A DNA stretch of 64,000 nucleotides from Squalus acanthias (taxonomy: Eukaryota), in the NCBI GenBank assembly GCA_030390025.1, contig CM059452.1, positions 10,168,001-10,232,000 of the forward strand, given 5' to 3'. Every line of letters begins with the position of its first letter. Within the stretch, counting starts at the first letter, position 1. The notes under the pieces are model-generated. The model was not told where the DNA came from, did not search any database, and was given only the letters and a program-made list of their open reading frames with translations. Below are positions 4,105-39,500 of this stretch, piece after piece. Position numbers and translations under genes: made by a program.

Positions 4105-4168
4105 CACACTGCTGTAGAGATATAGCGGATCCCGCCCAAAAACCCACACCGAGAGATCCAGATAGTGC

Positions 4169-12165: not shown

Positions 12166-12472
12166 TGCGGTGTTATGACCCAGAACTATTTCCTGGAATC
12201 CGCAGCTGTCAGCTGTGAAACCCTTAAACTGACGGTTCTGTTAGTTTTGGCCAAAGATGTGGTGAAGCGCCGTCTTGCAAAGTTCGCATCGTCACTGAAC
12301 CGGTCGGTGCAGCGGATGAGGATATTCTCCGGGCCCACGGACCGACCCTCCCGGAACCGGGACAGGCAAACTCTCGTCACCTCTGTATAGGAACAGGTTA
12401 TTGTCGCGATCTCTCCCTCCTGAGCGGTCACCTCTTCCATTGGCCAATGAGCGATCCATCCAATGACGCTGT
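12166..12472 (-). pseudogene. degenerate TCR V pseudogene with extra Cys (VCLS...ILIRC)
   Basis: Acceptor at 12473-12474; ITC retained, Trp replaced by Arg, YYC region reads K*FW; heptamer CACGGTG 12159-12165 with degenerate nonamer; no leader seen (CR1 fragment 12590-12870 upstream). Confidence 0.8.
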
Positions 12473-13032
12473 CTAAAGGACAGAGAGGGAAACGTTTAGA
12501 TAAAGTTCCAATAACTGTGAGTAATAAATCCCAACAGGCGGTGAGATTGTCGCTCACACAACAAAAGCGGGATAGCATTTCGGAATAGGAGTTCTCAGAG
12601 TGACTGTATCCAAACAGAAATATATGAAGAGTTTTGATGAAGTAAATAAGGAGAAACTGTTTCCACTGGCAGGAGGGTCGGTACCCAGAGGACAAACACA
12701 TTGAAGATACTTGGCAAAAGAACCAGAGAGGAGATGAGGAGATTTGATTTTTTACTCAGCGAGTTGTTGTGATCTGGAATTCACTGCCTGAAAGGGCGGT
12801 GGAAGCAGATTCAATAATAACTTCCAAAGGGTAATTGGATAAATACTTAAAAAGAGACAAATTGCAGGAATAAAGATACCTATATATTAGAATTAACAGC
12901 ACAATGTCTAATCACAAATACAGGGACCAGCTGAGACTCGCCCCTGATCACAATGTTCCCCTGACGCGCTGATATGTTGAGCGACGCTCTGACAGTTTTT
13001 GTACAGGTCCAGCCCAGCTCCGTGTCTCTGTG

Positions 13033-13480
13033 GGGCTCAGTGCGCAGTAATACACCGCGGAGTCTGTCAGTTGTGTTTCAGACACATTCAGCGGGACGGT
13101 TCGGCTCGAATCATTGAGCTTCGCTGAAAAACGGTCCCCTGGAAATCTCCCTCCATTCTCGCTAAATCTGTTTCTCTTCAGCAGATACTCTATGGATCCG
13201 CTGGGATCCTGACGGTACCAGAATAGTTCAGGAGTGCTGGTGCTTGTAGCTGTATAATTACAGTGCAACTGAACATCGTCTCCTTCACTGACTGTGGTTG
13301 CAGCCGGTGTCTGTGAAACGGAATCTCCTCGACAATATCCTGCAAGAGCCCAGAGCGATATTACATTAAAAAATGTCACTTCTCTGTGTTTACCCCCCAG
13401 AATCAATCTGTCACCCCCCAACACTTACCTGAAAAGCAAGTCAGGGCAGTTAAACATAAATATATATCCCCGCAGCTCAG
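13033..13480 (-). CDS. TCR alpha/delta V: intact V exon and RSS, own leader lacks ATG (CTG at 13478-13480)
   Basis: V exon 13339-13033 (LHC, FWYRQ, YYCALSP); RSS CACAGAG 13026-13032 / 23 / ACAAAAACT 12994-13002. Leader frame (L)SCGDIYLCLTALTCFS ends in a gtaagt donor; an upstream in-frame TAA comes before any ATG. Confidence 0.8.
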
Positions 13481-13896
13481 GGGTTGCAACGGGAACGTGC
13501 TTGGATGGACTGAATAAAAGTTCCTTTAATGAACATTCAGCACCTTCCAACGGGATCAGTTCCTCACCTTCACCTCTTGTGATGTGAAAAGAAAACTCCA
13601 ACCTGTCTGTAGGTTTAAGACTCATGTGTCTGTCAATGTCCGTCATTGGCTCCGGCAGGGCGGATGGGTCTGTCTGCCATTCGCCTTTAATCTCACCTCA
13701 ACTGATCCGCTTTCATTCACTGAGAGAGATTGTCGAGTTTCCCCAAACAGTGTTCAGTGTTGAGTCAAATGGGATCCAGATAATTTTCTTCACTTCGGAT
13801 CAACCTATTGATATTCATGTGTTCAGGGAACTGGCCGATTAAATATAATGTATGATACAGATGTGAAACACAATGCTGTGTAACTTGTGAACTTAC

Positions 13897-13948
13897 CAAT
13901 TACGAAAGCTGCAGCTGTGACGATTAAATAAAAAGTAACACCCAACAT
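13897..13948 (-). other. orphan family-C leader exon with its promoter (14000-14250), no cognate V exon
   Basis: ATG...MLGVTFYLIVTAAAFVI+G|gtaagt, 52 nt, phase 1; homologous to leader 41468-41519. Confidence 0.8.
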
Positions 13949-14329
13949 ATTTGCAGAGAGTTGATGGTGGATTTGAACAGAACGGTTTGAAGCTGAAATT
14001 GCCTTGCAGTCAAGAATTGGGAAGATGTTGAGTAATATCCGGTCTCTCTGCCGTTTGGTCCGTTCCCGACAGAGTCAGCAGATCACATTCAATCAGCTCT
14101 CGGTCCTTTGTTCTCCAATTCATCCAATCAGTTTGTAGCTCCTTTGTTTTCCAATTCAACCAATCAGCTCACAGCTCCTTTGTTCGCAAATTCATGGCGT
14201 CAGAGCGGGGATCAGAGAACGGAGTGAAAATGTTCGCCCTTTAGCAGCGTCAGTCTGTGAGGGGGGAGCAGTGAAGGACAATAGTTAATGTTGTTCTGGT
14301 GCCGGAGACTCCCATCTAAACCAGACACC

Positions 14330-14665
14330 ATGTGCTCCCCATGTTCCTCACTGATATTAGTGGTCGTGCTGCCCGGTGAGTCCATGTTTAAAGGAACCTA
14401 TATATTTCATGGGTTATATTTACTCCCAGACTTTTGACAGATTCTGTATTTTGTTACACTGGCGAAGCCTCATTAACACATGATCCACCTGATTTAAGGG
14501 TTCAGGAAGGACAGATCTTAATACTGAAGACTAGTTACTCCACAGCCGATAGATTTCCCTGCCTCTTCTGGTACAACCAGTAGCCCCGGGGATGATCCGA
14601 GATATTTAATGAGGGGATACATCTCGGTGCAGGGAGACAAGTCTCCAGATTTCCCAGAGCGGTTC
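14330..14665 (+). pseudogene. family-A V pseudogene, 3'-truncated, no RSS
   Basis: Leader MCSPCSSLILVVVLP 14330-14375; acceptor lost, first Cys lost, TAG at 14581, homology ends after DFPERF. Confidence 0.8.
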
Positions 14666-14836
14666 AAAGGCACAGACACGAATACAACTGTTTGATATAT
14701 AAACCTGATAGTCTATTGTCTCCGTGGGTTTGTGATCAAATTAACCCCACAGATAACAGCACAGAAGAACACATAATGGAGCTGTAAATTCTCGCTGAGG
14801 TTTTTGTCCGGGGCCTTTGCTTTTTCTGACGCTGTG

Positions 14837-15356
14837 CCTCACTGCACAGTAATAGACCGCCCCGTCCTCCACACTCAGGCTGCTTATATTGAGATAACCG
14901 TACTTTCTAGACGTGTTAGCAGCCGCCAGATATTGCCTTGCGATTTCGACACCCTTCAGTGCTACTGTTTTGCTAATTATCCAGCTTGGAGGCTGTGACG
15001 GTTTTTGCCGATACCATTGCATGTAGACAATATCCGGGCTTTTATATTCGCAATCTAACTGCACCGAACCCCCTGTTGACACGGCGATTGTCACCGGAGA
15101 CTGAGTTACTGGATCTACACACAGCCCGCCTGTGAAGATAGGGGAACAGAAGAGCAGAAGATTAAATCGAAACGTGTGTCTATCTGTATGAGAGTGTGTA
15201 ACCCTCCATCTACGCAACTGTCCATCATGTGGATATTTCTGATCGGTAATTGCACTAAATCCCTGCACACGCTCTTTGCAACAACCAGCTAACCTGTGTT
15301 TTTAATATAATCCAATACTTACTGTTCAACACAGCCGCCAGTATTATTAGAAACAT
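14837..15356 (-). CDS. TCR alpha/delta V segment, apparently intact
   Basis: Leader MFLIILAAVLN 15356-15323; V exon 15129-14837 (LDC, QWYRQ, YYCAVR); RSS CACAGCG 14830-14836 / 22 / ACAAAAACC 14799-14807. Confidence 0.92.
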
Positions 15357-16038
15357 GTCTGACTGAATCTCTCACAGTGACTTGGAATTGAATGAGGCAG
15401 AGATTGAGTAGGAGAGCGGTAACCCGGGCTGTTCAGCTGATTGTTCCACTCACACACTGCAGGGGGCGTCCCCATTGTGACCTCACTCAGGCTTCGATCG
15501 CTATTAGCTTTGGCGTTTGCATCACGTGACTTTCTAATTACTATTCATGGGTTTGGCGCCTTCTGCTTGTGCATTGTGGAACATCGGGCTTAGAATGAGG
15601 TCATTGAGGGGATTTAGGGTTTTTGGTCATATATAAAAACACGATTGCCAGCTATTGACTCTTAAAGAGCAAGATTATAGCTGATCAAAGCCACTCATTA
15701 TTTCTGATGCGGTGTAATCGCTTAATTACGCTCTCACTCTATTTCTTCCCAGTCGCTTGCTCAGCAAGCAAGAGCAGTTTGACCACAGACGTCATGAAGT
15801 GGCGAACAAAGGAGCTGTGTGCTGAGTGGGTGAATTGGAGAACAAAGCAGCTGTGAGATGTTTGGAAGAATTAGAGTAAAATGGAACTGTGAGCTGCTTG
15901 GATCTCACCTGTTGTCTCTGTCAGGAATGAACCAATCGGCAGAGACGCCGGATATCATTCAACACCTTCCCAAGTCTTGACTAAAATATTTCAGGTTGAA
16001 CTCGTTCTCTTCAAATCTGTCATCAACTCTCTGCAAAC

Positions 16039-16566
16039 ATGTTAGGACTTACTTTTTATTCTTTTCCTCACAGCTGCGGCTTTCTCAACTGGTAAAGTTT
16101 AAAAGCTACAAAATCTTCTCTCTTGTGACTGCCGTAGAGAATCTTTCTTTTACCTGTATTTTCTCTCTATTTCCTGTATATTCCGTCACCTTGATTCTAT
16201 TAGTCATTCAAAAAAATGATAATAAAAGTTTAAAGTTGTGTATTTGTAAATTTCTGCAGGTGTTAGTGGTGCGGACTCGGTATCACAGGGGCCGCTTGCA
16301 GTGATGCAGTTTGAAGGAGACTCGGTGACCATTAATTACAGCTATTCGACCACTGCTCCTTCACATTCCTTACAACTGTACCGTCAGGACCGCGACAAAG
16401 GGCCCACATTGCTGATCTACAGTCCTTCTTACGGAGATGTTTTCAAAGCAGAGGGCACGGGGGCTCGAATTTCCGCATTTCTCGACATTTCAGAAAGTAT
16501 GGGGAATTTCACCATCCGCGGACTACGACTGTCTGACAGCGTGGTGTATCACTGCGGGCGGAGAGA
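16039..16566 (+). pseudogene. family-C V pseudogene
   Basis: Leader 16039-16091 is 53 nt (+1 frameshift vs the 52-nt paralogs); V exon 16260-16566 has first Cys changed to Tyr; RSS CACAGTG 16567-16573 / 23 / ACAAACAAA. Confidence 0.85.
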
Positions 16567-17356
16567 CACAGTGACTGGAACCAGAGGGAGCCTCGTACAA
16601 ACAAACTGCCGGAATGTGACAGGGACAAGTGGGGAGCGGGCAGTGTGGGGAGAAACGGGGACTGTCAGTACTTCTCACAGGACAGTGTCCGTGTAAAAAC
16701 TGACAAATCAATCGCTATCCAACTAACAGTACAGAACAGGAAACATCATGTTTATTATTCATAAAAATAATCGTGTTGCTAATTTGATAATAAGGTATTC
16801 GATGGGACGGTGCTTCCAAACACTTTTCATGTAATGGGCACCTCAACTTTCAAACTTAGTGAAACAAATATAAACCAGTTCTCGTTCAGTGTCAGAATCG
16901 CACTCAGACCTGGCGCTCCAGTCGGCAGGAAAGGAATTGAACGGAGGGACCACATTCGGTGACGATGTAATAAACCATTGAGGAGTCAAAAATCCTTCAG
17001 AACAAAGAAGTCTCGGCTGAACTGTAACCCCGCGAGACTCCCATTCCCCAGCTGGTGCGCAAACTCGGAGAAAACTGTCCAGAAAACAGGCAAAAGAGCA
17101 ACAGTCAATAGTCTGAGGATGAAGGTGGCAGTGATTCAGGAGAGACAGTTCCCAGTGAGTAACAGGGAAAACAACGCGGAAACTGCACAGACTGAACCCA
17201 ACCGACAAATGAGAGACTTTGGGAACAGTTCTCATGATGGCCGGAACCGCAAACAGCACAAAGTGAGCCTTATATCCGGCTTCAGCAGGCGGAGCCTCTG
17301 ATCTACAAAGCGGCGAAAGTTTCTGTACCAGGCTTTAACTGGTTTCCATCAGTGTG

Positions 17357-17832
17357 GTCTCAGGGCGCAGTAATAAACTGCAGTGTCGGTCAGCTGCAGC
17401 CCCGAGATGGTTAAACTGGTGAATTTAGTCGAGGTCTGGATTTCTGCAGAGAAACGGGTTTTATCAAAATCTGATTTATGCTCAACTCCATCAACACCAT
17501 CATGATCCTTCCACAGTATAAACTCGGGCTGTGTGTCTGGGTGGTTCCGGTACCAATATAAATAATAAAAGGTGCTCCATTTAGTGTCATAGGTACAGTT
17601 TAAAGTCACCGCTTCCCATTCTGTCTAAACTCCTGAGGACAGCGTCTGAGTGACAGAATCTCCAAGACTCAGATCTGAAAAACATGTTCAAACAGGAAAA
17701 TATCAGACCAGTGGGTGTTTAAAATTCAGATTCAAACCATGTTTGGAAATGAGAGAAAAGATGAGATGTGTTTGGTCCATAATTACCTGTCAGAAATGCC
17801 CCCCACACAGCCCAGATGCTGAGTAGCCGCAT
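17357..17832 (-). pseudogene. family-D V pseudogene (TAG in FR1)
   Basis: Leader 17832-17787; V exon from 17674; in-frame TAG at 17625-17627 (AAG in the 6-kb paralog); RSS CACACTG 17350-17356 / 23 / ACAGAAACT 17318-17326. Confidence 0.88.
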
Positions 17833-18384
17833 TGTCGCTGTTCGCTCTGTAAAAGCGGGGTTGGATATTTGAAGATACCCGTTCTAATCCCCGCCCTCAA
17901 TAATCTGCTGTCTTGTCTCAGGATGCTCTCACCTCACTTCCTTGTCTCCCCAGTGGTGCTGTGAGACCGGTAGGTGGTGAGTTGGCTTCCAGTGAATGGA
18001 AACTCCCCGAGCTGGGCTACAGTCAGTGTCCTTATACGGGAATGGTTCCGCTTTTTGAGGCTGGGGCTCGGAACGAAACCTTTGTCTGAGTAATGGAACC
18101 CGGAAACTCAGGATTGCAGATGGTGACAGAAAATATTCCGGTATTAAAGAGACATTCTGAAGGACAATCGACATTGGGAGAACTCTGTGCTTGGGGCTTG
18201 TTTTAAAAGCACAATCACCACCTTGTGAAATATGTTCATTGTGTATAAACTGTCTCTGACCCAGCAACATACTCTGATCAAATAAACCCTGTGTACAGGC
18301 CGCGATCAAAGGGTCCGGGACTCTGACAGGGGAGATGTGTAAAGGGCTGCACAATATTGCAGGCAGGCACGGAAGGGCCACAAT

Positions 18385-19365
18385 ATGTATCAATGATTTG
18401 GATGAGGGAACCAAATGTAATATTTCTAAATTTGTTGACGACACGAAACTAGGTTGGACTGTGAGTTGTGAGGAGGATGCAAAGAGGCTTCAAAGCGATT
18501 TCGACAAGTTCAGTGAGTGGGCAAATACATGGCAGGGGTAGTATAACGTGGATAAATGTGAAGTTATCCACTTTGGTAGGAAAAACAGAAAGACAGAATA
18601 TTATTTAACTGGTGATAGATTGGGAAATGCTGATGTACAAAGGGACCTGGGTGTCCTGTACACCAGTCACTGAAAGCAAACATGCAGGTGCAGCAAGCAG
18701 TTAGGAAGACAAATGGTATGTTGGCCTTCATTGCAAGAGGATTTGAGTACAGGAGCAAGGATGTCTTCCTATAGTTATACAGGGCCTTGGTGAGACCACA
18801 CCTGAAGTAATATGTGCAGTTTTGGTCACCTTACCTAAGAAAGGATATACTTGCCATAGAGGGAGTGCAGCGAAGGTTCACCAGACTGATTCCTGGGATG
18901 GCAGGACTGTCGTATGAGGAGAGATTGGGTCGACTAGGCCTGTATTCACTAGAGTTTAGAAGAATGAGAGGGGATCTCACTGAAACGTATAAAATTCTGA
19001 TAGGGCTCGACAGACTGGATGCAGGGAGGATGTTTCCCTTGGCTGGGGGGCGGTCGAGAACGAGGGGTCTCAGTCTCAGGATACGGGGTAGGACATTTAG
19101 GACTGAGATGAGGAGATATTTCTTCACTCAGAGGGTGGTGAACCTGTGGAATTCTCTACAACAGAAGGCTGTGAAGGCCAAGTCACTCAATATAGTTAAG
19201 AAGGAGATTGATAGATTTCTAGACACAAAACGCATCAAGGGGCATGGGGAGCGAGCGAGAATATGGTATTGAGATAGAGGATCAGCCATGATCATATTGA
19301 ATGGCGGAGCAGGCTCGAAGGGCCGAATGATCTATTCATGCTCCTATTTTTCTATGTTTCTATCA
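18385..19365 (+). mobile_element. CR1 LINE 3' fragment
   Basis: ORF2 C-terminal motifs (INDLDEG, QFWSPYLRKDI, RRMRGDL, FFTQRVVNLWNSL), with stops. Confidence 0.9.
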
Positions 19366-19870
19366 TAGATTCAGAGAATCTTACAGCACAGAAGGGGCTT
19401 CGGCCCGTCGTGCCTGTTTAGTCCCATATCCCAGTTTTTTCTCTAGAACTCTGCAAATCAGTCCTCTTCAAGTACGTGTCCAATTGCCTTTTGAAAGTTC
19501 CCATGAAATCTGATTCCACCATCCTTTAATGTATTGCCTTGCAGATCTTAACAAACGTCTTTGTGAAGAAATGTCTTCTCATTTCCCCTCTAGTTCTTTT
19601 GTCAATTATTTTAAATCTATTCCCTCTTGTTACCAACCCACTTGCCAAAGGAAATACTTTCTCCCTATTTGCTCCGTCAAAACCTCTCATAATTTTGAAT
19701 AATTCTATTAGGTCTCCCCTTAACCTTCTCTGCTCTAAGAAGAACAATCCCGGCTTCTACAATCTCTCCACATAACTGAAGTCCCTCATCCCTGGTATCA
19801 TCCTGGTAAACCTCCTCTGTTCCCTCTCCAGGGCCTTGACATCATCCTAACGTGTGGTGCCCAGAAATGT
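19366..19870 (-). mobile_element. CR1 LINE 3' fragment
   Basis: LEQRRLRGDLIELFKIM motif on minus strand. Confidence 0.85.
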
Positions 19871-20163
19871 ACACAACAGAGAAAGGACAAATGGGGAGTT
19901 ATGGCGCCACAGACATGATTTGTGAAGTTCATTTTTATTCTAAATACGAGTTGAAATCACCTAAAAAATCCTCAAGTGGACCTGACCTGTTCTTGCTGAG
20001 TGTTGTGACTTGTCGCTCTTTTAAAAATCTCCCTGTGACTCTCGCTGTGGAGACTGAATTATCGCTGCTGGTTATCGGTGTGAGAGCGCCCTCTGGTGAG
20101 CACTAACCGGAACTCTCAGTGTGGGTTTTTGTACGGGATCCGCTATATCTCTGCAGCAGTGTG

Positions 20164-20595
20164 GGGCTCATGGCACAGAAATACGCGGCGCTGTCGGAGA
20201 CAAGAACTGCGGTGATATTTAAAGGAACCGTTTTGCTGTCTCTGTGCAAAACAGCAGAGAACAGGCCTGGGAAATCAGGAGACTGGTCTACCGTCCCCGA
20301 GCTATATATCCTCAGTAAATATCTCGGAGCTTCCCCGGGATACTGGATGTACCAGAACAGAGTTAGAGCAGCTGCCGAGTAACTGCAGTTCAATATTATG
20401 GTCTGTCCCTCCTGAACCGTTAATTCAGGCGGATCCTGGGACACTGATTCTTTGCCATTCGTTCCTGTAACAAAACACAGAATGTGTCAAAAGTCTGGGA
20501 GTAAGGAAAATCCGTGAAACACACAATGACCATTTACGCATGTACTCACTGGACAGCACGACCATTATTATCAGTAAGGAACACGGGGAGCACAT
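20164..20595 (-). CDS. TCR alpha/delta V (family-A body, family-B 3' end/RSS), apparently intact
   Basis: Leader MCSPCSLLIIMVVLS 20595-20550; V exon 20464-20164 (LNC, FWY, YFCAMSP); RSS CACACTG 20157-20163 / 24 / ACAAAAACC 20124-20132. Confidence 0.92.
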
Positions 20596-21644
20596 GGTGC
20601 CTGGTTTAGAATTAGACAGAAAACAGCAGATCGTTTTAAATATGTTGGCCCGTCTAGTCTGAAATTAAAGAATAAACTCAGATCAGGGGCAGTCTTCACT
20701 TATTAGGAGACTGAGGGACGTTTCCCAAGGACAGGATTGGCTGATCTCTCAGAACTGACACCAGCTGTGCACCAATCAGTCTTAGTTGTGGACCAATTAC
20801 TGATGTCTCCCTACAAACCCTTTCCTTCCCTAGCTCTGTGAGTGAGTCTCTCGCTCCCTCTGTCTCTCTCACTATCTGTCGCTCTCTGCCTCTCTCTCTC
20901 TCTCTCTCTCTATCGCTCTCTGCCTCTCTCTCTATCTCTCTCTCTCTATCGCTCTCTGCCTCTCTCTATATTTGTGTCTCGCTGTCGCTCACTCTATTTA
21001 ACTCGGTGTCTTTTTCTCTCCTTTTCTCTCTCTCTCTCCATCTCTCTCTCCCTGTCTTTGTTTCGGTGTCACTTACTTTGTTTAACTCTGTGACTTTCTC
21101 ACTCCCTCTCTCTCGTTTCTTCTCTCTCTCAGTAAGGTGAAAAGCGAAAAATAATATAAATCAATTCAATCCCCGGTATCACTTATTTCCCACCACAGCA
21201 AATGAGCTCCATTAACTTGTCGAAGCCCCAAGACTACGAGGGACATGACAAGTGGACAGCCCTCTGCACCGGTGAGATAGCTTTTAAAAATAGGACCTGA
21301 CGGATCTTCACCACACCCAGGACACCTGCTTGTAGAGATTTAACCCGTTATTCGTCCCAGAGATCTGAAGATCTGTGCGAACAGTGTGGTGGAAATGTCT
21401 GAATTTCACACTGGAATAAAATGGTTGAGAAATTTCTCTTATCCCAACACTGACAGCACTGACATAACTGGAGAAACCCGATCGGATCAGGCTGTATTTT
21501 CCGACTCATTTTCTGTATAACCCCTCGGGGAGTCAATCCCTGGTATTTTCCTGAGGTGAAGCACGAGAACCCATCCCATCTCACCCTCCTTCCCCTATGC
21601 CGACCTGTTTTTGTATGAGGGCCGAGGGATCCTTGTTCACTGTG

Positions 21645-22116
21645 GGTCTCAGGGCACAGTAATACACGGCGCTGTCTGTGACCTTCAAGCCTTTCATGGA
21701 TAAGTGTAAAGTGCCTTGTGTCAGGTTGGGATTCCCCCTGAAGTGTTCAAAGCCCGGAGCTGTCTCGTTATTCCCATAACTATCGGTTCTGCTCAGATAC
21801 TGAGGGGTTTTGTGGGGACACTGGCGATACCAAAACAGGTTATAGCTTGTAGCTGAACCCGATACAGAGTAACTGCAGGTTATTGTTGAATCTGAACCCT
21901 CTTCTGATCTGACTCCTTGTTCTGACTGGGACACCGAGTCTCCGTTACACACCTCTAAAAATAAACAGCGGACACACACCGGGTTAGACGGAGTAACAGA
22001 AAGAGAATAATCACCCGGAGATGGAGATGGGGATTGGAGAATGTTACAGGAAGGTTCCAATATCACCGACCTGTGATCAGGACAATAACCAGAGTCAGGC
22101 AGAGTTTCACCTCCAT
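21645..22116 (-). CDS. TCR alpha/delta V segment, apparently intact, extra Cys in FR2
   Basis: Leader MEVKLCLTLVIVLIT 22116-22071; V exon 21954-21645 (ITC, FWYRQCP, YYCALRP); RSS CACAGTG 21638-21644 / 23 / ACAAAAACA 21606-21614. Confidence 0.92.
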
Positions 22117-22349
22117 GGTTTCAGCCTGATCTCCAGAAACAAGAGATTGTGATCACTGCCTGTACCGGGTCTGGAATTGGAGAAACTGGAAGAGCGCAGG
22201 GATCTCATCAGATCGGCTGGGCTTTCCTCTCCCCGCTCATTTGCACCTCTCGAAACAGTCACTTCCTGCAGATGCGGATCAGGATCTTTGTAAAGTGATC
22301 AGAGAGCGCCCTCCTGCGGACAGTACAAGCTTGACGTAGTGCATTGGAA

Positions 22350-24050
22350 ACACGCACGTACACTGACATATACACAGACACACAGGCATATACAGACACA
22401 CTAATATATACACACACTGACAGATACACACGCATAAATACACACGCAGACATTTATACGCACACATACGTATACACACAGAGAAACATATACATACACG
22501 CAGACATATATATACACGCAGACATAGATATATATATATATATACACACACACGCACACAGACGTATATATACTCACAGACATATACACACCTGCAGAAA
22601 CATAGCCATAAGTACGCCAACATAAACCCAGAAACACACAATGGTTTTTATATTGTGGAGTTTACCGACACACAGACATGACACACAGACAAATAAACAC
22701 ACACATAGACACACAGACAAATACACACACACATAGACACACAGCCAGATAAACGCACACATAGACACACAGACAGATAGGCACACATATAGACACACAG
22801 ACAGATAAACACACACATAGACACACAGAGAGATAAACACACACATAGATACACAGACAGATAAACACAGTCATAGACACAGGCAAAATAGTTCGAGTGT
22901 AAACTGACGTTAACGGATTACTCTGAGGTAGTGACATTGCGACAATATCGTGTCAGGTTTTCATTGCTGTAAAATTGATTATTTTTTATCCGCAAGAACA
23001 CCCTAAAATCGATTCCTCATTAACCGTGAGCATCGGTTTCAAAACACGGTTAAACTGGGAATCCTTTTGAAGAATAACCTTCAATCGAAGGGTTTATTTC
23101 TGTCCTTCACATTGTGGGTGAGGCCGGTAACAGTCAGATAGAATCCGCAGCCATTCCCGGGATCGGATGATCAGATGTCCGGGAGCCTGTGTCCCGGGGC
23201 CGCGGGCAGTGATGATAAACACAGACAGCGACAATGATCATTGGCAGCTCATTGAAACCAGGCTCTTGGTTTGATTCAGGAAATGACGGGACTCCGTGTG
23301 CTGACAGAAACACTTCAAATTCTCCCCTTCAGTCCGAAAGCTGCAACTGAGAGGAGGCACCGGGTGAAGTGCGGGCTCCCAGTGTGGGGAGACTGCGGCC
23401 ATTATGGAGTTTGGGCTTTTAGTTATTTGGGTCCTTCCAACGTTGTTATTTGTCAGACCCAGTTATTGGTAATCTCTGAAACTTTGAACAGTACCGGAAA
23501 TACACACGCGCACACCCTTAAACAAAGCACACACAAACACATGCATTAACATACACACACTTACACACGCATAAACTCAAACATGAACACAAACACACAC
23601 ACATACAAACACACACACTTACAAACACACACACTTACATGCAAACACACACATGTACACATAAACACACACACGCTTACACCTGAACATACACAATCAC
23701 TTACACATAACCATAAACATACACATAAACACACACATGGACGCACATACACAAAAAACAAACACACAATTAAACATAAACACAATTACAAATAAACACA
23801 CACACTTATACAAAGACTTACACATAAACATACACAAACTGACAAAAATACACGCACACTTACACATAATCACACACTTACACATAAATACACATATATA
23901 GAATTATGCAAACACACACACTGACACAGCAACACACACACAATTACACAAACACACACGCACACACTTACACAGCAACACACACATTAACACACAAACA
24001 CAGACTAAAACAAAACAAGAGATTGTCATACACACATACGCAAACACGAA
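22350..24050. repeat. two (CA/TA)-rich microsatellite blocks (22350-22885, 23500-24050)
   Basis: Low-complexity acac/atac/agac runs. Confidence 0.85.
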
Positions 24051-24691
24051 TGCGCGAAAAAACCTCAGGCTATAGACGATTGTAGAATGAAAATGCACTT
24101 TTTGAACGAACACAGTTTCCAACGATTGTTCTGAATGAATAATTCCTGATACCATAACATCTCACATTTCTCTATTCTGGTCCTACACATACACTGTATC
24201 ATTGTTCTTGTTGGAAACTGATACAAGTTAATTATGTTCAGATCATTGCCATAACAAATAAATAAACAAGATTATAAATCACATCTGGTCTCTTACCCAG
24301 CCCCCTTGACAGTCTCCAAATAAGTAGCTATCTAAACCTATCGTTACAATAATCGATATCAATCAGTAAACCTCCCTCGATATTTCATCATATTATTCCC
24401 GAATGATAGATTGTACGAAATTGATGCAAAATCAATTAGCGTGTGACATTGAAGAAAAAACTGTCGTTTTTTCCAACACGGACTACAGGAGGATCCAAAA
24501 GAAAGAGCGACTGTGGAGTTAGGAACAGAGATAGATTGCTGAGACAGATTAACTTAACACAAGATATACATTGAAAATTAAATTAGGGAACAAACTTATA
24601 CCTTAAGGAAAAGAAGAGAATATATAATAATATTATGATATCTTGGATTAATAAAGGATCTGAATATATTTCCGCCTCTACATCCCCGTAG

Positions 24692-24819
24692 ATTCCTCAG
24701 ACCAAATCTTGATTGAAGACTATGAGGAAGAGAGCGGCAACATCTGGACAACCGCTTCCACATTCATCATCCTGTTCTTCCTGAGCATGTCCTACAGCGC
24801 TGCCGTCACTCTAGTGAAG
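24692..24819 (+). CDS. immunoglobulin heavy-chain membrane exon TM1 (IgM-like), orphan
   Basis: ccccgtag acceptor, phase 1, (D)SSDQILIEDYEEESGNIWTTASTFIILFFLSMSYSAAVTLVK, then gtgaga donor: acidic spacer plus the canonical IgH TM motif W-TASTFI-LF-LS--YS--VTL-K. Confidence 0.93.
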
Positions 24820-24959
24820 GTGAGAAGATTCAATCCACTCACACTTCGATCTGACTGAAGCGGTTTAACAAATCTCTAAAAGTTTCATTGATAAAAACCC
24901 TGAGATAAATGCCCCAAACCACTAAATCTCTGCTTCATTCTTTTATCCCTCTTTTACAG

Positions 24960-24968
24960 ATCAAGTGA
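24960..24968 (+). CDS. IgH membrane exon TM2 (IK*) followed by AATAAA
   Basis: Polypyrimidine tract + ttttacag|ATC AAG TGA; AATAAA at 25032-25037 and 25425-25430; equivalent to the VK* exon of membrane IgM. Confidence 0.85.
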   Translation: MK

Positions 24969-26619
24969 TCGGTTGAATTTCGGACGCCGTGGATTTTCCT
25001 GACCTGTTTATTAACATCTCTGTGTCATGAAAATAAAATATATCCTCTTAGTGATTCTCAGAGTCAAATGCCTTCAGTTAATAGATCCGAATCTGTAGCT
25101 GAGAAAATCATAACCGGGATTTCCGTCTCTCTGTTTGGAATGTGTGAGATAATCGTGGCTATAATGTGTATATATCTTAGAGTTACACCGTTGTTTGAAT
25201 ATTTCATGTGTAAATAAGTCACTTTTCTCATTCGTAATTGACAATTGTTCCCTTCCCTTTATGTAGAGCCCCTGTTTTCTCTCCCTGGTGTCTGTTACAG
25301 TTGTACAGATAACTGGCAGCTCAGACCGCCTGTGATCTGGTCTCAATGTGACGCTCTGTTGTTATATTCACTTTGTGTTAACTTTTTTAAAACTTCACTG
25401 TAAATTGTTCTCTGTGAAATTGTTAATAAATCTGGAATGACAAATTGACTAATTTGGACTTTGCTGAATTACTTTCTCCAAGGCTGCTCCATACCGCTCA
25501 ATTTTCCCTATCACACTTTGTTTTATTTCCCTGACAGGTATTTTTCACCCGTCCTGTCTGGGTTGTGTTTGAACCCAAGTTCCCTTCGGTTAAGGAGCCA
25601 CTGCGCCACCCAGTGTCGCATCAGAGTAACGACACCTTTACTGCTGCCTTTTCATGTCAAGACCCAGAGGCGGAATGACTGCATAGCGACCAGGCGCACC
25701 TTGAAGTCCATTCTCACATTATGGTCTGTCACAGTCATATGCCAGGTTCCATTAAAGAGCAGGGTTCTGCTCCATCACAGCCTAATACAGTACAGTACAT
25801 GGCAGAGTAAAGCTCCCTCTAAACTGTCCCTACATTACAACAGTGACTACAATTCAGAAAGTCCTTCATTGGTTGTGAAGCGCTTTGGGAATTTCGGTGG
25901 TCGTGAAAGGCGCTATATAAATGCAAGACTTGCTTTCTTCTTTATTTCCCAACAAACACGCCCAGGGCAGGTGTTAGATATCTGACACAGGCACACCAGC
26001 GAGCACAAACCCTGGGAATAATTCCCGAAGACTGGGCCTATCTGACGCACAGACTCTATCGCCATCTGTTCTCTTTAAACACACTCAGACACCCAAGGCA
26101 GAGAGGAAAGAAGGAGAGGTTGTATTTGAGGGACAGGAGATGAGGGATCACGCGGTGTCCACAGGCAGTGGGCTCTGCTGGATACAGTTTGTGTGATAGA
26201 CCAACACAATCAAATTCTGATGGAATATCATTCCAGTTTGGTTCAGGCCAAATATGCGAGTGGAACCATTCACTATAGAATGTATCTTTGTTTTGGATTC
26301 GCCCCTTTAAAGGAGACCCGAATCAAATGGTCCACACAGACCAAGGAGAAAATTGGGCGTGACTGGGGTAACCACTTCCAACCCTTTTCCAATCTGAGCA
26401 ACACCCATTTACCCTGACCCTCGGTCTCCTGTTTCATAAGCACATAAAAACATAAGAAATAGGAGCAGGAGTGGGCCATTTGGCCCTTCGAGCCTGCTCC
26501 GCCATTCAATGAGATCCTGGCTGATCTTCTACCTCAACTCCACTTTCCTGCACTATCCCCATATCCCTTGATGCCCTTAATATTCAAAAATCTATCAATC
26601 TCTGTCTTGAATATACTCA

Positions 26620-33070: not shown

Positions 33071-33918
33071 CACAGTGTAACAAACAGGCGGAGAGTCCGC
33101 ACAGAAACCTGCCCCGAGGGGGAGCGCCGCTCTGCTGTGTTTGGAGTAACGGGATTGGGAGGGGCTCGGTTATAATAATCGGAGGGCAGAGGGAATGAGC
33201 ACAGAACAATGATGATATATTGAAGAGAGAGATTTGAAGAAAGTGAGAAATGAAGAGAGTTGGAAACATGACAGAGGAAAGAAAGAGAAAACACCAAAGA
33301 CAGAATGAGAGAGAGAAAGAGAAAAAGCGGTGAAATAATGAGAGTGTAGAGGACAGCAAATTAGTAAAGGCGGGAAAGAGAAATGAAAGAAAGTGAGAAA
33401 TAACGAGTGAGAAACACAAAGCAAAAGGTGAGAGAAAGCGATAAAGAAAGAGATTCAGAAATAAAGTAAAATGTACTTTCCTTTAAATTAATTCACATTT
33501 CCCTTCGCCCTATTTACAAAGCTGAATTGTCTGAAACAATACACATTGTCTCCCAATAACAGGCCTCTGGAAACTGCCCCATCGATAAACTCACACTTTA
33601 CTCTGCCGATTTTCCCGACAGTGTAAAATTCTCAGAGTCACCGGCAGAGGGCGCCGTGGTCACATGTTTCTCGCCGTCATCAACTGGAAATTATAGAGAC
33701 AAATCTTGCGGTGACACTGCCCGCGGCAGCCCCGCCCACAGCTTCCGTTTGCTGCTCTCGCTCTGACCCGCCTTGCCTGCCCGGTGTTATTGGAGAGATT
33801 GCTGCCGCTGTTCCCTGTTTGGCATTGCTTGGATCAGCAGTGCAGTGGGGCGCGGATCTGTATTTCTGCTCCGACAGAGGATTTCCCGGACTGCAGAGTT
33901 ACAGACGGAGGGAGGATC

Positions 33919-34425
33919 ATGTGGAACCGTCTCGCACCGCTCCTCATCATTATATCACTTCTCAGTAAGTATTTCCTTCACATTCTCCCCTGACTGCTGT
34001 AAACCAGGTGTTATTGTTGCTAAAATGATGCTGATTATGTTGCTTAAGATGACATTAATGGTGATGGATGGTGATGATGATGGTGATGGTGATGATGACT
34101 ATTACTGTTATTTTATTTTAGAATGGAGCCACCAAGACGCAGCCGAACAGCCGGTCCCTGAGATGACGGTTGAAGAAGAAAGTAATGTCACACTAACCTG
34201 CACCTTGAAAACAAGCGATTCTAACCCTTATTTGTACTGGTACAGTCAGCGCCCCGGGCAGCCTCCACAGTACGTGCTTCGTCTTATCGGAGGGAATGTG
34301 AACCGGAACCCCGACGTTACTGACCGATTCAATTCTACGTTTAATAAAACTACCAAGATTACCGAGCTAACGATCGGCAAAGCCCTGATCTCCGACACCG
34401 CCGTATATTTCTGTGCCATGGAGCC
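33919..34425 (+). CDS. TCR alpha/delta V segment (family B), apparently intact
   Basis: Leader 33919-33964; V exon 34122-34425 (LTC, YWY, YFCAMEP); RSS CACACTG 34426-34432 / 24 / ACAAAAACC 34457-34465. Confidence 0.93.
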
Positions 34426-34593
34426 CACACTGCTGCAGAGATATAGCGGATCCCGTACAAAAACCCACACTGAGAGTTCCAGTTAGTGCTCACCAGAGGG
34501 CGCTCTCACACCGACAAACAGAAGCGATAATTCAGCCTCCACAGTGAAGTCACAGGGACCTTCTGAAAAGGGCGAAAAAACAGAACACTCCAC

Positions 34594-34903
34594 AAGTCAC
34601 GGATTTTCCTTCTGTCTTAACTCTTGAAGACAACGTCTGAGTGACAGAATCACAATAATTCAGATCTGAAAAAAACGTTCAAACAGGAAAAGGACAGACC
34701 AGCGAGTGTTTAAAATTCAGATTCAAACCATGTTGGAAATTAGAGAAAAGTTGAAATGTGTTTGATCCGCCATCATCATCACCATTTCACCAACAATAAC
34801 ACCTGGGTTACAGCAGTCAGGGGGAGAATGGATGTTTACTGGGGAGCAAATACTTACTGAGAAGTGATATAATGATGAGGAGCGGTGCGAGACGGTTCCG
34901 CAT
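34594..34903 (-). pseudogene. chimeric V fragment: family-B leader + family-D intron end/FR1, truncated
   Basis: Leader MRNRLAPLLIIISLL 34903-34858; intron switches to family-D sequence near 34765; exon from 34665 reads DSVTQTLSSRVKTEGKSVT and homology then ends. Confidence 0.8.
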
Positions 34904-36504
34904 GATGCTCCCTGAGTCTGTAACTCTGCAGTCCGGGAAATCCACTTTCGGAGCAGAAATACAGATCCCCGCCCCACTGCACTGCTGATCCAACCAATGC
35001 CAAAGAGGGAGCAGCGGCAGCAATCTCTCCAATAACACAGGGCAGGCAAGGCGGGTCAGAGCGAGAGCAGCAAACGGAAGCTGTGGGCGGGGCTGATGAA
35101 GAGGGAGTGAGAAGAAGGAAATAGTCGCCTGGTGCTCACTTTCTCTCGCAATGAGCCTTTCTCTGAAGCGGAATGATGAAGGGATGGGCACAGGAGCTGT
35201 TTTAAGTAGCAGCGTGTCCCAGTGCCCGACTGGAATGACCCCAAGAGGAGTATCAGCATTAAAACCGAACCCGCAATATCCATTTAAACTGAGCTGTGGA
35301 AGTAGAAGCTGGGGACACGGGTTCAATGTATCAAAGCTCATTTTACGGCTGGTACCAGGAAATTCTTCACACACACAGAGTGATTAATGTGTCGAATATA
35401 CTTCTGGATAGAGTAGCGGAGGGAAATATCATGGAGCCGTTTAAGGAAAAGTTTGAGGCTGCAGTGAGGGGCGGGAGTGAGGATCTCTCTGGATGGATGA
35501 GACAAGACAAGGCGAATGGCCTCCCTCATTCTCAGTGATCTGGTGAACGGCAACACGGCGGGATTTGTACCTTGTAGTTACAGGTAGTCGCCACCAGAGG
35601 GCAGTGGGCGGATGTGTTCACTGTTGGTTTCAGTGTGAGGGCGAGTTACAGACGGACAACACCGTTCAGTTCCTTTATTTAATAAAGGGATTCGGAAATA
35701 AAGGCATTAATTTCAAATGGAAGCATTTTTTTATTTTTAATGTCATTGTGATTTATTAAAGTATTATTAATGACATGTTGTAAATATTTTAATGCCCAGC
35801 TCACCCTAGTATCACTGAGCCTATCAGCTTTTCGCATCCTCCCATTCTGCTGAAACATGTCAGTCATTCCCCATTTCATTCATATAACAGGTGGCGTTTG
35901 TACAATTTACCGTATCGTTGTGTTCAAGTCCCTCAGGACCCGCTGGCCGTCTATATTCCCCTTTATATCAGCAGTGTGTAGATCGAATGGTTAGTGAGCA
36001 GCTCTTTAATCGGAGCCTCCGGCACTGATACCAGAACAACATTAACTATTTCCCTTTACTGCCCCCACCGCACAGATTGCACCTGTTTAGTGAATTTAGA
36101 TCCCACTGCATCTGAAAACAGAATGTGGACGAGTTGCTGCCCAAACAATGTGAGATTAATGTTTTTATCCGTTCAGGGACCTGCACTCATCAGTTAAAGA
36201 CAGCAGCAAGTAGATCGCACCGGGGGAACGGGGCTGTGCTGATTGTGTCCAGGAAGAGAAGCGAGAAAGGACAAATATACAACCCGTGACTCAGGGATGA
36301 GCGGGTGCAGCTTCGCACATGATCCTCAGGAATTGTCTGATTGGTTGGGAAAACTTTAGCACATTGCTGAGAGACGGAATGAATCCAATTCTAGAATAGT
36401 TTGCATCGAGTCTGTTCCTCATTCATCTCAAATAATTTACGACTAAATATACATCAATAACCTCCACAAGATAGCAATCGTTGTGTGCCCGTCTGTGTTT
36501 ATTC

Positions 36505-39500
36505 TGGTATGTGTGTCTGTGTATGTTTGACTGTGNNNNNNNNNNNNNNNNNNNNNNNNNNNNNNNNNNNNNNNNNNNNNNNNNNNNNNNNNNNNNNNNN
36601 NNNNNNNNNNNNNNNNNNNNNNNNNNNNNNNNNNNNNNNNNNNNNNNNNNNNNNNNNNNNNNNNNNNNNNNNNNNNNNNNNNNNNNNNNNNNNNNNNNNN
36701 NNNNNNNNNNNNNNNNNNNNNNNNNNNNNNNNNNNNNNNNNNNNNNNNNTATGAATGTGTGTGTGTCTGTGTCTGTGTTTGAGTGTGTCTGTGTCTGTAT
36801 GTGTGCTTTGAGTGTGTGTGTTTGTGTTTGAGTGTGTGTGTGTCTGTGTGTGTGGTTTGAGTGTGTGCGTGTGTTTGAGTGTGTCTGTGTCTGTATGTGT
36901 GCTTTGAGTGTGTGTGTGTGTCTGTGTGTGTGCTTTGAGTGTGTGTGTGGTTTGAGTGTGTGCATGTGTTTAACTGTGTCTGTGTCTGTATGTGTGCTTT
37001 GAGTGTGTGTGTGGTTTGAGTGTGTGCGTGTGTTTGAGTGTGTCTGTGTCTGTATGTGTGCTTTGAGTGTGTGTGTGTGTGTTTGAGTGTGTGTGTGTCT
37101 GTGTGTGTGCTTTGAGTGTGTGTGTGTGTTTGAGTGTGTGTGTGTCTGTGTGTGGTTTGAGTGTGTGCGTGTGTTTGAGTGTGTCTGTGTCTGTATGTGT
37201 GCTTTGAGTGTGTGTGTTTGTGTTTGAGTGTGTGTGTGTCTGTATGTGTGCTTTGAGTGTGTGCGTGTGTTTGAGTGTGTGTGTGTCTGTATGTGTGGTT
37301 TGAGTGTGTGTGTTTGTGTTTGAGTGTGTGTGTGTTTGAGTGTGTGTGTGTGTCTGTGTGTGTGGTTTGAGTGTGTGCGTGTGTTTGAGTGTGTGTGTGT
37401 CTGTATGTGTGCTTTGAGTGTGTGCGTGTGTTTGAGTGTGTGTGTGTCTGTATGTGTGGTTTGAGTGTGTGTGTTTGTGTTTGAGTGTGTCTGTGTCTGT
37501 ATGTGTGCTTTGCGTGTGTGTGTTTGTGTTTGAGTGTTTGTGTGTGTTTGAGTGAGTGTGTGTTTGTGTGTGTGGTTTGAGTGTGTGTTTGTGTTTGAGT
37601 GTGTCTGTGTCTGTGTGTGTGGTTTGAGTGTGTGTCGTGTGTTTGAGTGTGTTGTGTCTGTGTGTGTGGTTTGAGTGTGTGTGTGTGTTTGAGTGTGTGT
37701 GTTTGTGTGTGTGGTTTGAGTGTGTGCGTGTGTTTGAGTGTGTCTGTGTCTGTATGTGTGGTTTGAGTGTGTGGCTGTGTTTGAGTGTGTGTGTCTGTGT
37801 GTGTGGTTTGAGTGTGTGCGTGTGTTTGAGTGTGTGTGTGTCTGTGTGTGTGGTTTGAGTGTGTGCGTGTGTTTGAGTGTGTGTGTGTCTGTGTGTGTGG
37901 TTTGAGTGTGTGCTGTGTGTTTGAGTGTGTCTGTGTCTGTGTGTGTGGTTTGAGTGTGTGCGTGTGTTTGAGTGTGTGTGTGTCTGTGTGTGTGGTTTGA
38001 GTGTGNNNNNNNNNNNNNNNNNNNNNNNNNNNNNNNNNNNNNNNNNNNNNNNNNNNNNNNNNNNNNNNNNNNNNNNNNNNNNNNNNNNNNNNNNNNNNNN
38101 NNNNNNNNNNNNNNNNNNNNNNNNNNNNNNNNNNNNNNNNNNNNNNNNNNNNNNNNNNNNNNNNNNNNNNNNNNNNNNNNNNNNNNNNNNNNNNNNNNNN
38201 NNNTGTGTTTGAGTGTGTCTGTGTCTGTATGTTTGGTTTGAGTGTGTGTGTGTGTTTGAGTGTGTCTGTGTCTGTATGTGTGCTTTGAGTGTGTGTGTGT
38301 GTGTTTGAGTGTGTGTGTGTCTGTGTGTGTGGTTTGAGNNNNNNNNNNNNNNNNNNNNNNNNNNNNNNNNNNNNNNNNNNNNNNNNNNNNNNNNNNNNNN
38401 NNNNNNNNNNNNNNNNNNNNNNNNNNNNNNNNNNNNNNNNNNNNNNNNNNNNNNNNNNNNNNNNNNNNNNNNNNNNNNNNNNNNNNNNNNNNNNNNNNNN
38501 NNNNNNNNNNNNNNNNNNNNNNNNNNNNNNNNNNNNNNNNNNNNNNNNNNNNNNNNNNNNNNNNNNNNNNNNNNNNNNNNNNNNNNNNNNNNNNNNNNNN
38601 NNNNNNNNNNNNNNNNNNNNNNNNNNNNNNNNNNNNNNNNNNNNNNNNNNNNTGTTTGAGTGTGCGTGTGNNNNNNNNNNNNNNNNNNNNNNNNNNNNNN
38701 NNNNNNNNNNNNNNNNNNNNNNNNNNNNNNNNNNNNNNNNNNNNNNNNNNNNNNNNNNNNNNNNNNNNNNNNNNNNNNNNNNNNNNNNNNNNNNNNNNNN
38801 NNNNNNNNNNNNNNNNNNNNNNNNNNNNNNNNNNNNNNNNNNNNNNNNNNNNNNNNNNNNNNNNNNNNNNNNNNNNNNNNNNNNNNNNNNNNNNNNNNNN
38901 NNNNNNNNNNNNNNNNNNNNNNNNNNNNNNNNNNNNNNNNNNNNNNNNNNNNNNNNNNNNNNNNNNNNNNNNNNNNNNNNNNNNNNNNNNNNNNNNNNNN
39001 NNNNNNNNNNNNNNNNNNNNNNNNNNNNNNNNNNNNNNNNNNNNNNNNNNNNNNNNNNNNNNNNNNNNNNNNNNNNNNNNTGTGTTTGAGTGTGTCTGTG
39101 TCTGTATGTGTGGTTTGAGTGTGTGTGTGTGTTTGAGTGTGTCTGTGTCTGTATGTGTGCTTTGAGTGTGTGTGTTGTGTGTGTTTGAGTGTGTCTGTGT
39201 CTGTGTGTGTGTTTGTGTGTGTTTGAGTGTGTCTGTGTCTGTGTGTGTGGTTTGAGTGTGTGTGTGTGTTTGAGTGTGTCTGTGTCTGTATGTGTGGTTT
39301 GAGTGTGTGTGTGTGTTTGAGTGTGTCTGTGTCTNNNNNNNNNNNNNNNNNNNNNNNNNNNNNNNNNNNNNNNNNNNNNNNNNNNNNNNNNNNNNNNNNN
39401 NNNNNNNNNNNNNNNNNNNNNNNNNNNNNNNNNNNNNNNNNNNNNNNNNNNNNNNNNNNNNNNNNNNNNNNNNNNNNNNNNNNNNNNNNNNNNNNNNNNN

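What the first reader, a model, noticed from the sequence alone, without database searches (positions are those of the whole stretch)
24692..25037. Intact Ig heavy-chain membrane exons (TM1+TM2+polyA) stranded among TCR V genes, with no CH exons
Seen: open TM1 exon (SSDQILIEDYEEESGNIWTTASTFIILFFLSMSYSAAVTLVK), canonical splice sites, a 140-nt intron, TM2 IK* and AATAAA. I found no CH, VH or JH in the 24 kb upstream, only TCR Vs and repeats. Known: this is the membrane-IgM-type TM motif, and shark TCRalpha/delta loci are reported to use IgH-type V segments. Inference: either a recent relic of an IgH cluster once embedded here, or a retained B-cell-receptor anchor whose phase-1 acceptor could take a J or Ig-domain donor and yield a hybrid receptor. 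The absence of disabling changes is notable but also fits recent origin.
Basis: partly seen in the sequence, partly recalled or inferred. Interest (0 to 1): 0.88.

Follow-up and report, generated by a model that had tools for sequence, protein, structure and literature searches.

The report
Stranded tail of a shark IgM gene
This is the intact-looking last piece (membrane-anchor exons and 3' end) of a shark IgM antibody gene left on its own among T-cell-receptor V segments, most likely an ordinary leftover of gene-cluster reshuffling rather than a new kind of receptor.

Summary
Window 24692-24968 carries an open TM1 exon, a 140-nt GT..AG intron and a TM2 exon (IK, stop). TM1 matches membrane IgM anchors: human mu chain in PDB at E 2e-7, and shark IgM at 73-75% identity. 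No constant-domain exon and no J-like motif was found in the 64 kb. The neighbours are V exons followed by 23-spacer RSS, and the nearest resembles TCR alpha V.

New here: in one public run, probably RNA, a contig skips exactly this intron. Coverage runs from 24046 to 25443, just past a second AATAAA at 25425-25430. So near-identical copies (96-99%) are spliced at these sites. That contig differs from the window at 25001 and 25003, so expression of this locus itself is not shown.

Intactness carries little weight: at 1-4% divergence a neutral copy stays intact with P 0.67-0.87.

Best reading: the 3' end of an incomplete IgM cluster. IgH clusters mixed with TCR alpha/delta V exons are published (PMC12227049), as are incomplete shark Ig clusters (PMC8692893). 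The hybrid-receptor idea has no support. The scan noted a similar lone TM pair 1.74 Mb away in this genome (unchecked).

The parts
23520..24010 (.). AC-rich low-complexity tract bounding the IgM-derived block upstream (a second tract lies at 22340-22880). The homology breakpoint probably lies in or at this tract.
   Evidence: TRF rows and sequence. Contigs of X1 and X2 that are specific to the block start at 24046 and 24159; upstream there is only repeat-type coverage.
24046..24691 (+). Flank upstream of TM1, homologous to the intron that precedes TM1 in expressed IgM genes of related organisms. It ends in a pyrimidine-rich tract and AG.
   Evidence: X1 record 1: a 726-nt contig lies colinear on 24046-24771 with 26 differences. 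X2 record 27 lies on 24384-24801 with 12 differences in 418. Acceptor read.
24692..24819 (+). TM1 exon: phase-1 acceptor, 42 full codons, acidic membrane-proximal stretch and the mu-type membrane helix.
   Evidence: (tblastn E 2e-16 to P0003).
24820..24959 (+). 140-nt GT..AG intron between TM1 and TM2.
   Evidence: Joint 24817->24958 'skips 140, GT..AG (cut +2)' in one X1 contig, depth 116.9, side 58.
24960..24968 (+). TM2 exon coding part: Ile-Lys-stop (other sharks and most contigs: Val-Lys).
   Evidence: At 24960 A>G in nearly all X17 and all X18 contigs and in the two contigs counted there in X1; X2 has A like the window.
24969..25443 (+). 3' untranslated region as used by expressed relatives. 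Holds AATAAA at 25032-25037 and at 25425-25430.
   Evidence: X1 depth by bin: 296.6 (25000-25199), 159.1 (25200-25399), 18.1 (25400-25599), 0 (25600-25799). X1 records 6 and 7 end at 25439 and 25443. Signals read.
21584..22120 (-). Nearest upstream neighbour: a V exon on the opposite strand with a 23-spacer RSS at 21644, TCR alpha-like.
   Evidence: Pfam V-set E 2.3e-12. Of 49 homologues, the only specific names are TCR alpha V.

Best explanation
The block from about 24.0 to 25.44 kb is the solitary 3' end of an IgM heavy-chain minicluster. It comprises the last part of the Cmu4-TM1 intron, TM1, the 140-nt intron, TM2 and a roughly 475-nt 3' UTR with its poly(A) signal. It lies between TCR alpha/delta-type V segments in the region where elasmobranch IgH clusters and TCR alpha/delta V exons are interspersed. 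It most likely arose at the DNA level, since its introns are kept. Either the V-D-J-Cmu1-4 part of a resident cluster was deleted, or a partial duplication or inversion carried only the cluster's tail, with the upstream break at the AC-rich tract. It diverged only a few percent from expressed copies and so still looks intact. It has no upstream exon to splice from and is probably not used. Shown: identity as mu-type TM exons, absence of C and J exons in the window, and use of exactly these splice sites in near-identical transcripts elsewhere. Inferred: the origin by deletion or partial duplication, and the lack of function.
For: The membrane anchor is mu-type. No C-domain exon in 64 kb with 22 Ig heavy-chain queries at E<=0.05, although TM1 alone scores E 2e-16. 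0 C1-like frames and 0 J motifs. The block is unique in the window. It sits inside a mosaic of duplications, including an inverted pair 4-3156 / 33375-29400 at 78-94%, where V orientation switches from mostly minus (RSS 303..21644) to mostly plus (33071..62990). Both introns are retained, so it is not a retrocopy. Contigs of relatives lie colinear from 24046 to 25443 at 96-99%. Expected survival of the frame and splice dinucleotides under neutrality is 0.87 at 1.2% and 0.67 at 3.6% divergence. [quoted passage not shown] Three of 7 IgNAR clusters are incomplete in bamboo shark (PMC8692893, passages). No assembly gap lies nearer than 36536.
Against: Nothing shows the locus is silent. The one read-laying run used contigs of other organisms or individuals, and none matches the window at 25001, 25003 or 25050. 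In the coding part no difference private to the window was listed, against 18 such sites in about 1260 nt of flanks, intron and UTR. About 1.9 would be expected in 137 nt, so P is about 0.15 (my arithmetic table 3). That table shows only 40 of 992 rows, so weak purifying selection cannot be excluded. The upstream breakpoint is not mapped, because I could not fetch an intact IgM cluster for comparison (look-up of encoding contigs closed). DNA before the window start was not seen. Scan notes about 30 kb before the start mention only V genes (unchecked).
Confidence: 0.7

Rival explanations
1. Assembly artefact: the two long AC-rich tracts (22340-22880, 23520-24010) caused a collapse or misjoin. 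In the real chromosome the TM exons then follow Cmu4 of an ordinary IgM cluster.
For: Long low-complexity tracts lie immediately upstream of the block. Scan notes place a complete IgM gene 21.6 kb beyond the window's end (unchecked). The short contigs laid (at most 726 nt on the block) cannot bridge the tracts.
Against: No N run lies nearer than 36536. About 640 nt of unique sequence (22880-23520) sits between the two tracts, next to a V exon. The scan noted a second lone TM pair 1.74 Mb away (unchecked), which would need a second artefact.
Confidence: 0.1
2. The block is transcribed on its own or by read-through in lymphocytes. It then acts as a splice-and-poly(A) trap or terminator for germline transcription in the V array, without making a receptor.
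For: Both splice sites, two AATAAA signals and the UTR are intact. X1 holds an unspliced contig across the TM1 acceptor (24046-24771, depth 21.8), which is what a copy lacking an upstream donor would give.
Against: The same contig is equally explained by pre-mRNA of normal IgM genes. It differs from the window at 26 of 726 places. No promoter evidence exists.
Confidence: 0.1
3. A working anchor: TM1's phase-1 acceptor receives a donor from a far upstream IgM cluster, or from a TCR leader, J or NAR-type cassette. This would give a membrane Ig or a hybrid TCR-V/Ig-TM chain.
For: The acceptor is phase 1, as for Ig-domain and J donors (plus general knowledge, recalled). Frame and sites are intact. 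A NAR-TCR cassette is noted at 62.5-63.8 kb (unchecked; RSS-like sites at 62990, 63393 and 63774).
Against: No J-like motif anywhere in the window and no C exon. The V segments within 18 kb upstream are on the opposite strand. V-to-J joining would delete the block or leave it outside the transcript (inference). No joint into 24692 from elsewhere in 20000-24691 was listed in any of 4 runs, though only 15 of 61 joint rows were shown.
Confidence: 0.04

Closest known systems
Membrane exons (TM1/TM2) of shark IgM heavy-chain clusters, e.g. Chiloscyllium punctatum GCC19654.1 and Heterodontus peptide AAB20992.1
   Same: Same two-part layout ending in a two-residue last exon. Same acidic stretch followed by a NIWTTASTFI.LFFLS..YSAAVTLVK helix. 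73-75% identity over 41-42 residues.
   Different: No Cmu1-4, V, D or J in front of it. Met-Ser where 6 of 6 compared sequences have Ile/Leu-Phe. Ile-Lys rather than Val-Lys in TM2. A membrane-proximal part three residues shorter than in Chiloscyllium.
Human and mouse membrane IgM in solved B-cell receptor structures (8e4c, 8ema, 7xq8, 7xt6, 7wsp)
   Same: The helix aligns without gaps over 32-33 residues, E 2.3e-7 to 1.9e-5.
   Different: Only the anchor is present here. Pairing with CD79 was not tested.
Incomplete Ig clusters in shark genomes (3 of 7 IgNAR clusters in white-spotted bamboo shark, PMC8692893)
   Same: A minicluster lacking part of its segments, in a multi-copy, duplicating family (passages read).
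   Different: Those were described as lacking variable-domain genes. Here only the extreme 3' end remains, the isotype is IgM, and it sits among TCR V segments.
Antigen-receptor complex of elasmobranchs: IgM/IgW/IgNAR clusters linked to TCR alpha/delta (Flajnik et al. 2025, PMC12227049)
   Same: Ig heavy-chain material and TCR alpha/delta-type V exons intermingled on one chromosome (section 6 read).
   Different: The main text has 0 occurrences of 'pseudogene' and 'orphan' and does not describe lone TM exons. Its table S1 with coordinates was not open to me.

Membership tests
Ig mu heavy-chain membrane exons (TM1/TM2) | Membrane helix with the conserved mu pattern (W-TTASTF-I-LF-LS--YS--VTL-K) | tested here: met
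   PDB phmmer E 2.3e-7 to membrane mu. 13 invariant columns among 7 aligned sequences. One deviation, Ser33 where the other 6 have Phe.
Ig mu heavy-chain membrane exons (TM1/TM2) | Two exons: TM1 entered in phase 1 and left in phase 0, then a last exon of two codons plus stop, canonical AG/GT/AG | tested here: met
   Read. The same intron is removed in a contig of run X1. That the mouse last exon codes Val-Lys is recalled, not from a call.
Ig mu heavy-chain membrane exons (TM1/TM2) | Lies downstream of a CH4 exon of the same gene, whose internal donor splices to TM1 | tested here: not met
   No C-domain match in the whole window at E<=0.05 with 22 heavy-chain queries. 0 C1-like frames.
Ig mu heavy-chain membrane exons (TM1/TM2) | This copy is transcribed and joined to Cmu4 in B cells | tested here: inconclusive
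   A spliced TM1-TM2 contig exists in X1, but it carries other letters than the window at 25001 and 25003. What precedes TM1 in it was not among the rows shown.
Complete shark IgM minicluster (VH-D-D-JH-Cmu1-4-Sec-TM) | VH with RSS, D, JH, four Cmu exons and a secretory tail within about 18-20 kb (cluster size from the abstract of PMC2191167, search listing) | tested here: not met
   Only the TM exons are present. The 24.7 kb upstream holds V exons with 23-spacer RSS (one tested, TCR alpha-like) and repeats.
TCR alpha/delta V array with interspersed IgH material (elasmobranch antigen-receptor complex) | V exons followed by 23-spacer RSS, TCR alpha/delta-like in sequence, near Ig heavy-chain genes | tested here: met
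   24 RSS-like rows (23 heptamer positions), most 22-24 spacers standing behind V-like exons. The nearest V is V-set; the only specific names among its 49 homologues are TCR alpha V. Only that one V was tested this way. Complete IgM genes nearby are known only from unchecked scan notes.

The most novel reading that the evidence does not exclude
The lone TM/poly(A) cassette is kept by selection and used. In lymphocytes a transcript starting at an upstream V leader, a rearranged cassette or a distant IgM cluster would splice into TM1's phase-1 acceptor, giving a membrane chain that couples a TCR-locus V domain to the B-cell-receptor anchor. The scan's note of a second lone TM pair 1.74 Mb away would then mark a recurrent, retained module rather than debris.
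Probability: 0.04. Interest if true: 0.85.

Novelty: new member of a known kind. Interest (0 to 1): 0.2.

Why it matters
It adds little beyond a concrete example of how unstable the shark region is in which antibody heavy-chain clusters and T-cell-receptor V segments are mixed. Clusters there are broken as well as duplicated, and fragments can keep perfect splice and poly(A) signals. For annotators it is a warning: such fragments can be glued to neighbouring V exons by gene predictors and yield false Ig/TCR hybrid models. The refined 3' end (distal AATAAA at 25425-25430) and the exact intron use seen in transcripts help annotate membrane IgM in this group. Only locus-specific transcripts joining TM1 to another exon would make it important.

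Tried and rejected
1. Looked for hidden constant-region remains: regex for C1-set frames (none) and tblastn with all 22 retrieved heavy chains. The two weak Cmu4-like hits (E 0.016) turned out to be the YYC ends of V-like exons.

2. Looked for J segments as possible donors (none). The regex is simple and could miss unusual J segments.

4. Tried the ESM Atlas to name the neighbouring V (error) and used the search for homologous proteins instead. The PDB search of that V was useless for Ig-versus-TCR typing, because multi-domain scFv entries top the list.

5. Pfam gave nothing for TM1, for the 407-aa ORF at 26857-28077 or for the 174-aa ORF at 25461-25982.

6. Considered a retrocopy and rejected it, since both introns are present.

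7. Considered that Met32/Ser33 mark decay. The main spliced X1 contig shares G at 24789 (Met), and no row for 24791 was among those shown, so these residues are probably lineage features. This is an inference from which rows were listed, not a direct reading.

8. Literature: six searches found no description of lone Ig TM exons in a TCR locus. Subscription papers and supplements (for example table S1 of PMC12227049) were not visible and may list such fragments.

9. The joined TM1+TM2 peptide was not searched. TM1 was searched alone, and TM2 at two codons is too short to search.

Full report
**What is there.**

The coordinates are exact.
- A pyrimidine-rich tract ends in AG at 24690-24691.
- TM1 runs 24692-24819. 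It is entered in phase 1 and has 42 full codons: SSDQILIEDYEEESGNIWTTASTFIILFFLSMSYSAAVTLVK.
- GT follows at 24820, and the intron is 140 nt, ending in AG at 24958-24959.
- TM2 at 24960-24968 reads Ile-Lys-stop.
- AATAAA stands at 25032-25037 and again at 25425-25430.

**Identity.**

- Against all PDB chains, the only hits at E<=1e-3 are Ig heavy chains. Six distinct membrane mu sequences score E 2.3e-7 to 1.9e-5 and one gamma-1 scores 1.1e-3. The helix aligns without gaps over 32-33 residues.
- Against 1.84 billion cluster representatives, 22 proteins reach E<=1e-3 and none reaches 1e-10, as expected for 42 residues.
- I looked up 10 of these 22. The cartilaginous-fish ones are three Chiloscyllium punctatum proteins, one of them a Cmu1-4+TM chain at 73% identity. 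The others are a 43-residue Heterodontus heavy-chain peptide (75%) and a Callorhinchus protein.
- In an alignment of 7 sequences, 13 columns are invariant. The window departs from all six others at Met32-Ser33, where they have Ile/Leu-Phe.
- The isotype is therefore IgM. IgW and IgNAR anchors were not compared directly.

**Is it alone?**

- tblastn of all 22 proteins against the window at E<=0.05 gives 16 places. Several queries are full IgM, or IgM+IgD-like, chains.
- One place is the TM block, with 26 HSPs and a best E of 2e-16.
- Thirteen places are matched only by the V domains of the queries.
- Two places (2918-2983 plus strand, 29638-29573 minus strand, E 0.016) are matched by a Cmu4 stretch of P0003. 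They lie in V-like exons ending DTGIYYCAVGH.
- A pattern scan of all open frames of 45 residues or more gave 7 V-like and 0 C1-like frames. A J-motif scan gave 0.
- TM1 at 73% identity scores E 1e-14 in the same search, so an intact or moderately decayed Cmu exon would have been seen.
- The block is unique in the window.
- The nearest assembly gap is at 36536.

**Surroundings.**

- 24 RSS-like rows were found, at 23 heptamer positions. Most have 22-24-nt spacers and stand behind V-like exons.
- They are mostly on the minus strand from 303 to 21644 and mostly on the plus strand from 33071 to 62990. The TM block lies in the gap where the orientation turns.
- The V exon 2.6 kb upstream (21584-22120, minus strand) is a V-set domain. 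Of its 49 homologues, the only two with specific names are TCR alpha V regions; the rest carry generic Ig-like or V-set-domain labels, 'hypothetical protein' or no name. Only this one V was typed in this way.
- The window is a mosaic of duplications. 4-3156 is an inverted copy of 33375-29400 at 78-94%, and many V-bearing pieces recur.
- Two long AC-rich tracts (22340-22880, 23520-24010) lie directly upstream of the block.

**Reads.**

One run search on 24692-25037 listed 22 runs with coded names. None is on record as RNA, and the best share of words was 0.53.

I laid four runs on 20000-25999 at 80% likeness. All are Logan contigs.

- **X1** (organism A, 102 M letters) covers 24046-25443, simple repeats and a very high-copy element at 25800-25999. 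It covers none of the V exons at 20000-22200.
  - One contig (depth 116.9, at least 58 letters on each side) joins 24817 to 24958, 'skips 140, GT..AG'. This is the predicted intron, so X1 is most probably RNA.
  - Unspliced pieces are also present: 24046-24771 (726 nt, 26 differences, depth 21.8) and 24805-24967 (163 nt, 2 differences).
- Depth stays high through 25000-25399 (296.6, then 159.1). Contigs end at 25439 and 25443, about 10 nt after the distal AATAAA.
- **X2** (organism B) gives the same footprint at low depth, for example 24384-24801 with 12 differences in 418.
- **X17 and X18** (organisms H and I) cover all 30 bins with many contigs that are 85-90% alike. They look like genomic DNA of species with many copies.

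**Does the RNA come from this locus?**

- All six X1 contigs at 25001, 25003 and 25050 carry other letters than the window.
- The spliced contig must cover 25001 and 25003, because its shorter side is 58 letters.
- It therefore comes from a paralogue, or from another individual or species.
- Expression of the window's own copy is neither shown nor excluded.
- What precedes TM1 in that contig was not among the rows shown (1190 loose-end rows were hidden).

**Decay or constraint?**

- At 24789 (third base of Met32), the main X1 contig and X2 agree with the window. X17 and X18 have T, which gives Ile.
- At 24960, X2 agrees with the window (Ile). Nearly all the others have G, which gives Val.
- Among the 40 of 992 rows shown, 18 sites between 24046 and 25443 have a window letter found in none of the runs that cover the site, all outside the coding part. 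None of the 137 coding bases is such a site.
- At the flank rate about 1.9 would be expected, so P is about 0.15 (my arithmetic). This is not informative.
- A count of possible disabling changes covered 16 of 396 coding substitutions that create stops plus 6 splice bases. It gives a neutral survival probability of 0.87 at 1.2% divergence and 0.67 at 3.6%. Indels were ignored.
- Intactness therefore says little.

**Explanation.**

- The block is the tail of an IgM minicluster that has lost, or never received, its V-D-J-Cmu part.
- It arose at the DNA level, because both introns are kept.
- The upstream break is at or in the AC-rich tract.
- It is young enough to look intact.
- Without an upstream donor it is most probably unused.
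- I give this reading 0.7.

| Rival | Confidence |
|---|---|
| Misjoin at the AC-rich tracts | 0.1 |
| Transcribed but non-coding splice/poly(A) trap | 0.1 |
| Working anchor or hybrid receptor | 0.04 |

**Comparison with what is known.**

- Flajnik et al. 2025 (PMC12227049; outline, section 6 and term passages read) report that IgM, IgW and IgNAR clusters lie close to TCR alpha/delta in four elasmobranchs. They also report TCR alpha/delta-type V exons between IgH clusters.
- The words 'pseudogene' and 'orphan' do not occur in that main text.
- Wei et al. 2021 (PMC8692893; passages only) report 37 IgM clusters on seven chromosomes in bamboo shark, and 3 of 7 IgNAR clusters incomplete.
- Heterodontus clusters are 18-20 kb (abstract of PMC2191167, search listing).
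- Six literature searches found no description of lone TM exons in a TCR V array.
- Such a fragment is nonetheless an expected by-product of a known arrangement, so I class it as a new member of a known kind.

**Scan notes** (unchecked AI notes).

- The same genome is noted to hold several complete IgM clusters within the TCR alpha/delta V array, one of them 21.6 kb beyond the window's end.
- Another lone IgM-type TM pair is noted 1.74 Mb before the window.
- Notes about 30 kb before the window's start mention only V genes.
- These notes shaped the context but were not tested here.

**Limits.**

- No shark genomic DNA outside the window could be read.
- The organisms in the runs are coded.
- Contigs cannot show strand, ends or rare variants.

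Noticed in passing
window 4-3156 and 29400-33375: A large inverted duplication (78-94% identical) carrying V-like exons that end ...DTGIYYCAVGH (2696-3028 plus, 29528-29803 minus) and a roughly 54-nt tandem array (800-1958, 31746-32560). It brackets the 26 kb that holds the TM block.
   Followed up: partly
window 303-21644 versus 33071-62990: V/RSS orientation switches from mostly minus strand to mostly plus strand across the interval that contains the TM block. Exceptions are at 4105+, 6439+, 47064- and 63774-.
   Followed up: partly
window 25800-25999: Very high-copy element (...GCGCTTTGGGA..GTGAAAGGCGCTATATAAATGCAAG...) with summed contig depth of 67,000 to 1.8 million in all four runs. Other copies lie at 11757-11865 and 56533-56637. 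It looks like a SINE-type repeat.
   Followed up: no
window 26654-28440: An element bounded by 290-nt inverted ends (26654-26943 vs 28440-28152, 97.6%). It encloses a 407-aa ORF with a YIDD-type motif and a Cys/His-rich tail. No Pfam hit at E<=0.01. Possibly a retroelement fragment.
   Followed up: partly
window 22340-22880 and 23520-24010: Two long AC/ACAT-rich low-complexity tracts that produce many spurious Cys/Val-rich and His/Thr-rich ORFs. They are possible hot spots for breakage or for assembly error.
   Followed up: partly
window 36536-39823: Five N runs (198-489 nt) in a region whose 4-kb GC content drops to 0.27.
   Followed up: no
window 25425-25443: The distal AATAAA, followed about 10 nt later by the ends of RNA-like contigs, suggests that the membrane-IgM 3' UTR in this shark group is about 475 nt. 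This is longer than the proximal signal implies.
   Followed up: partly
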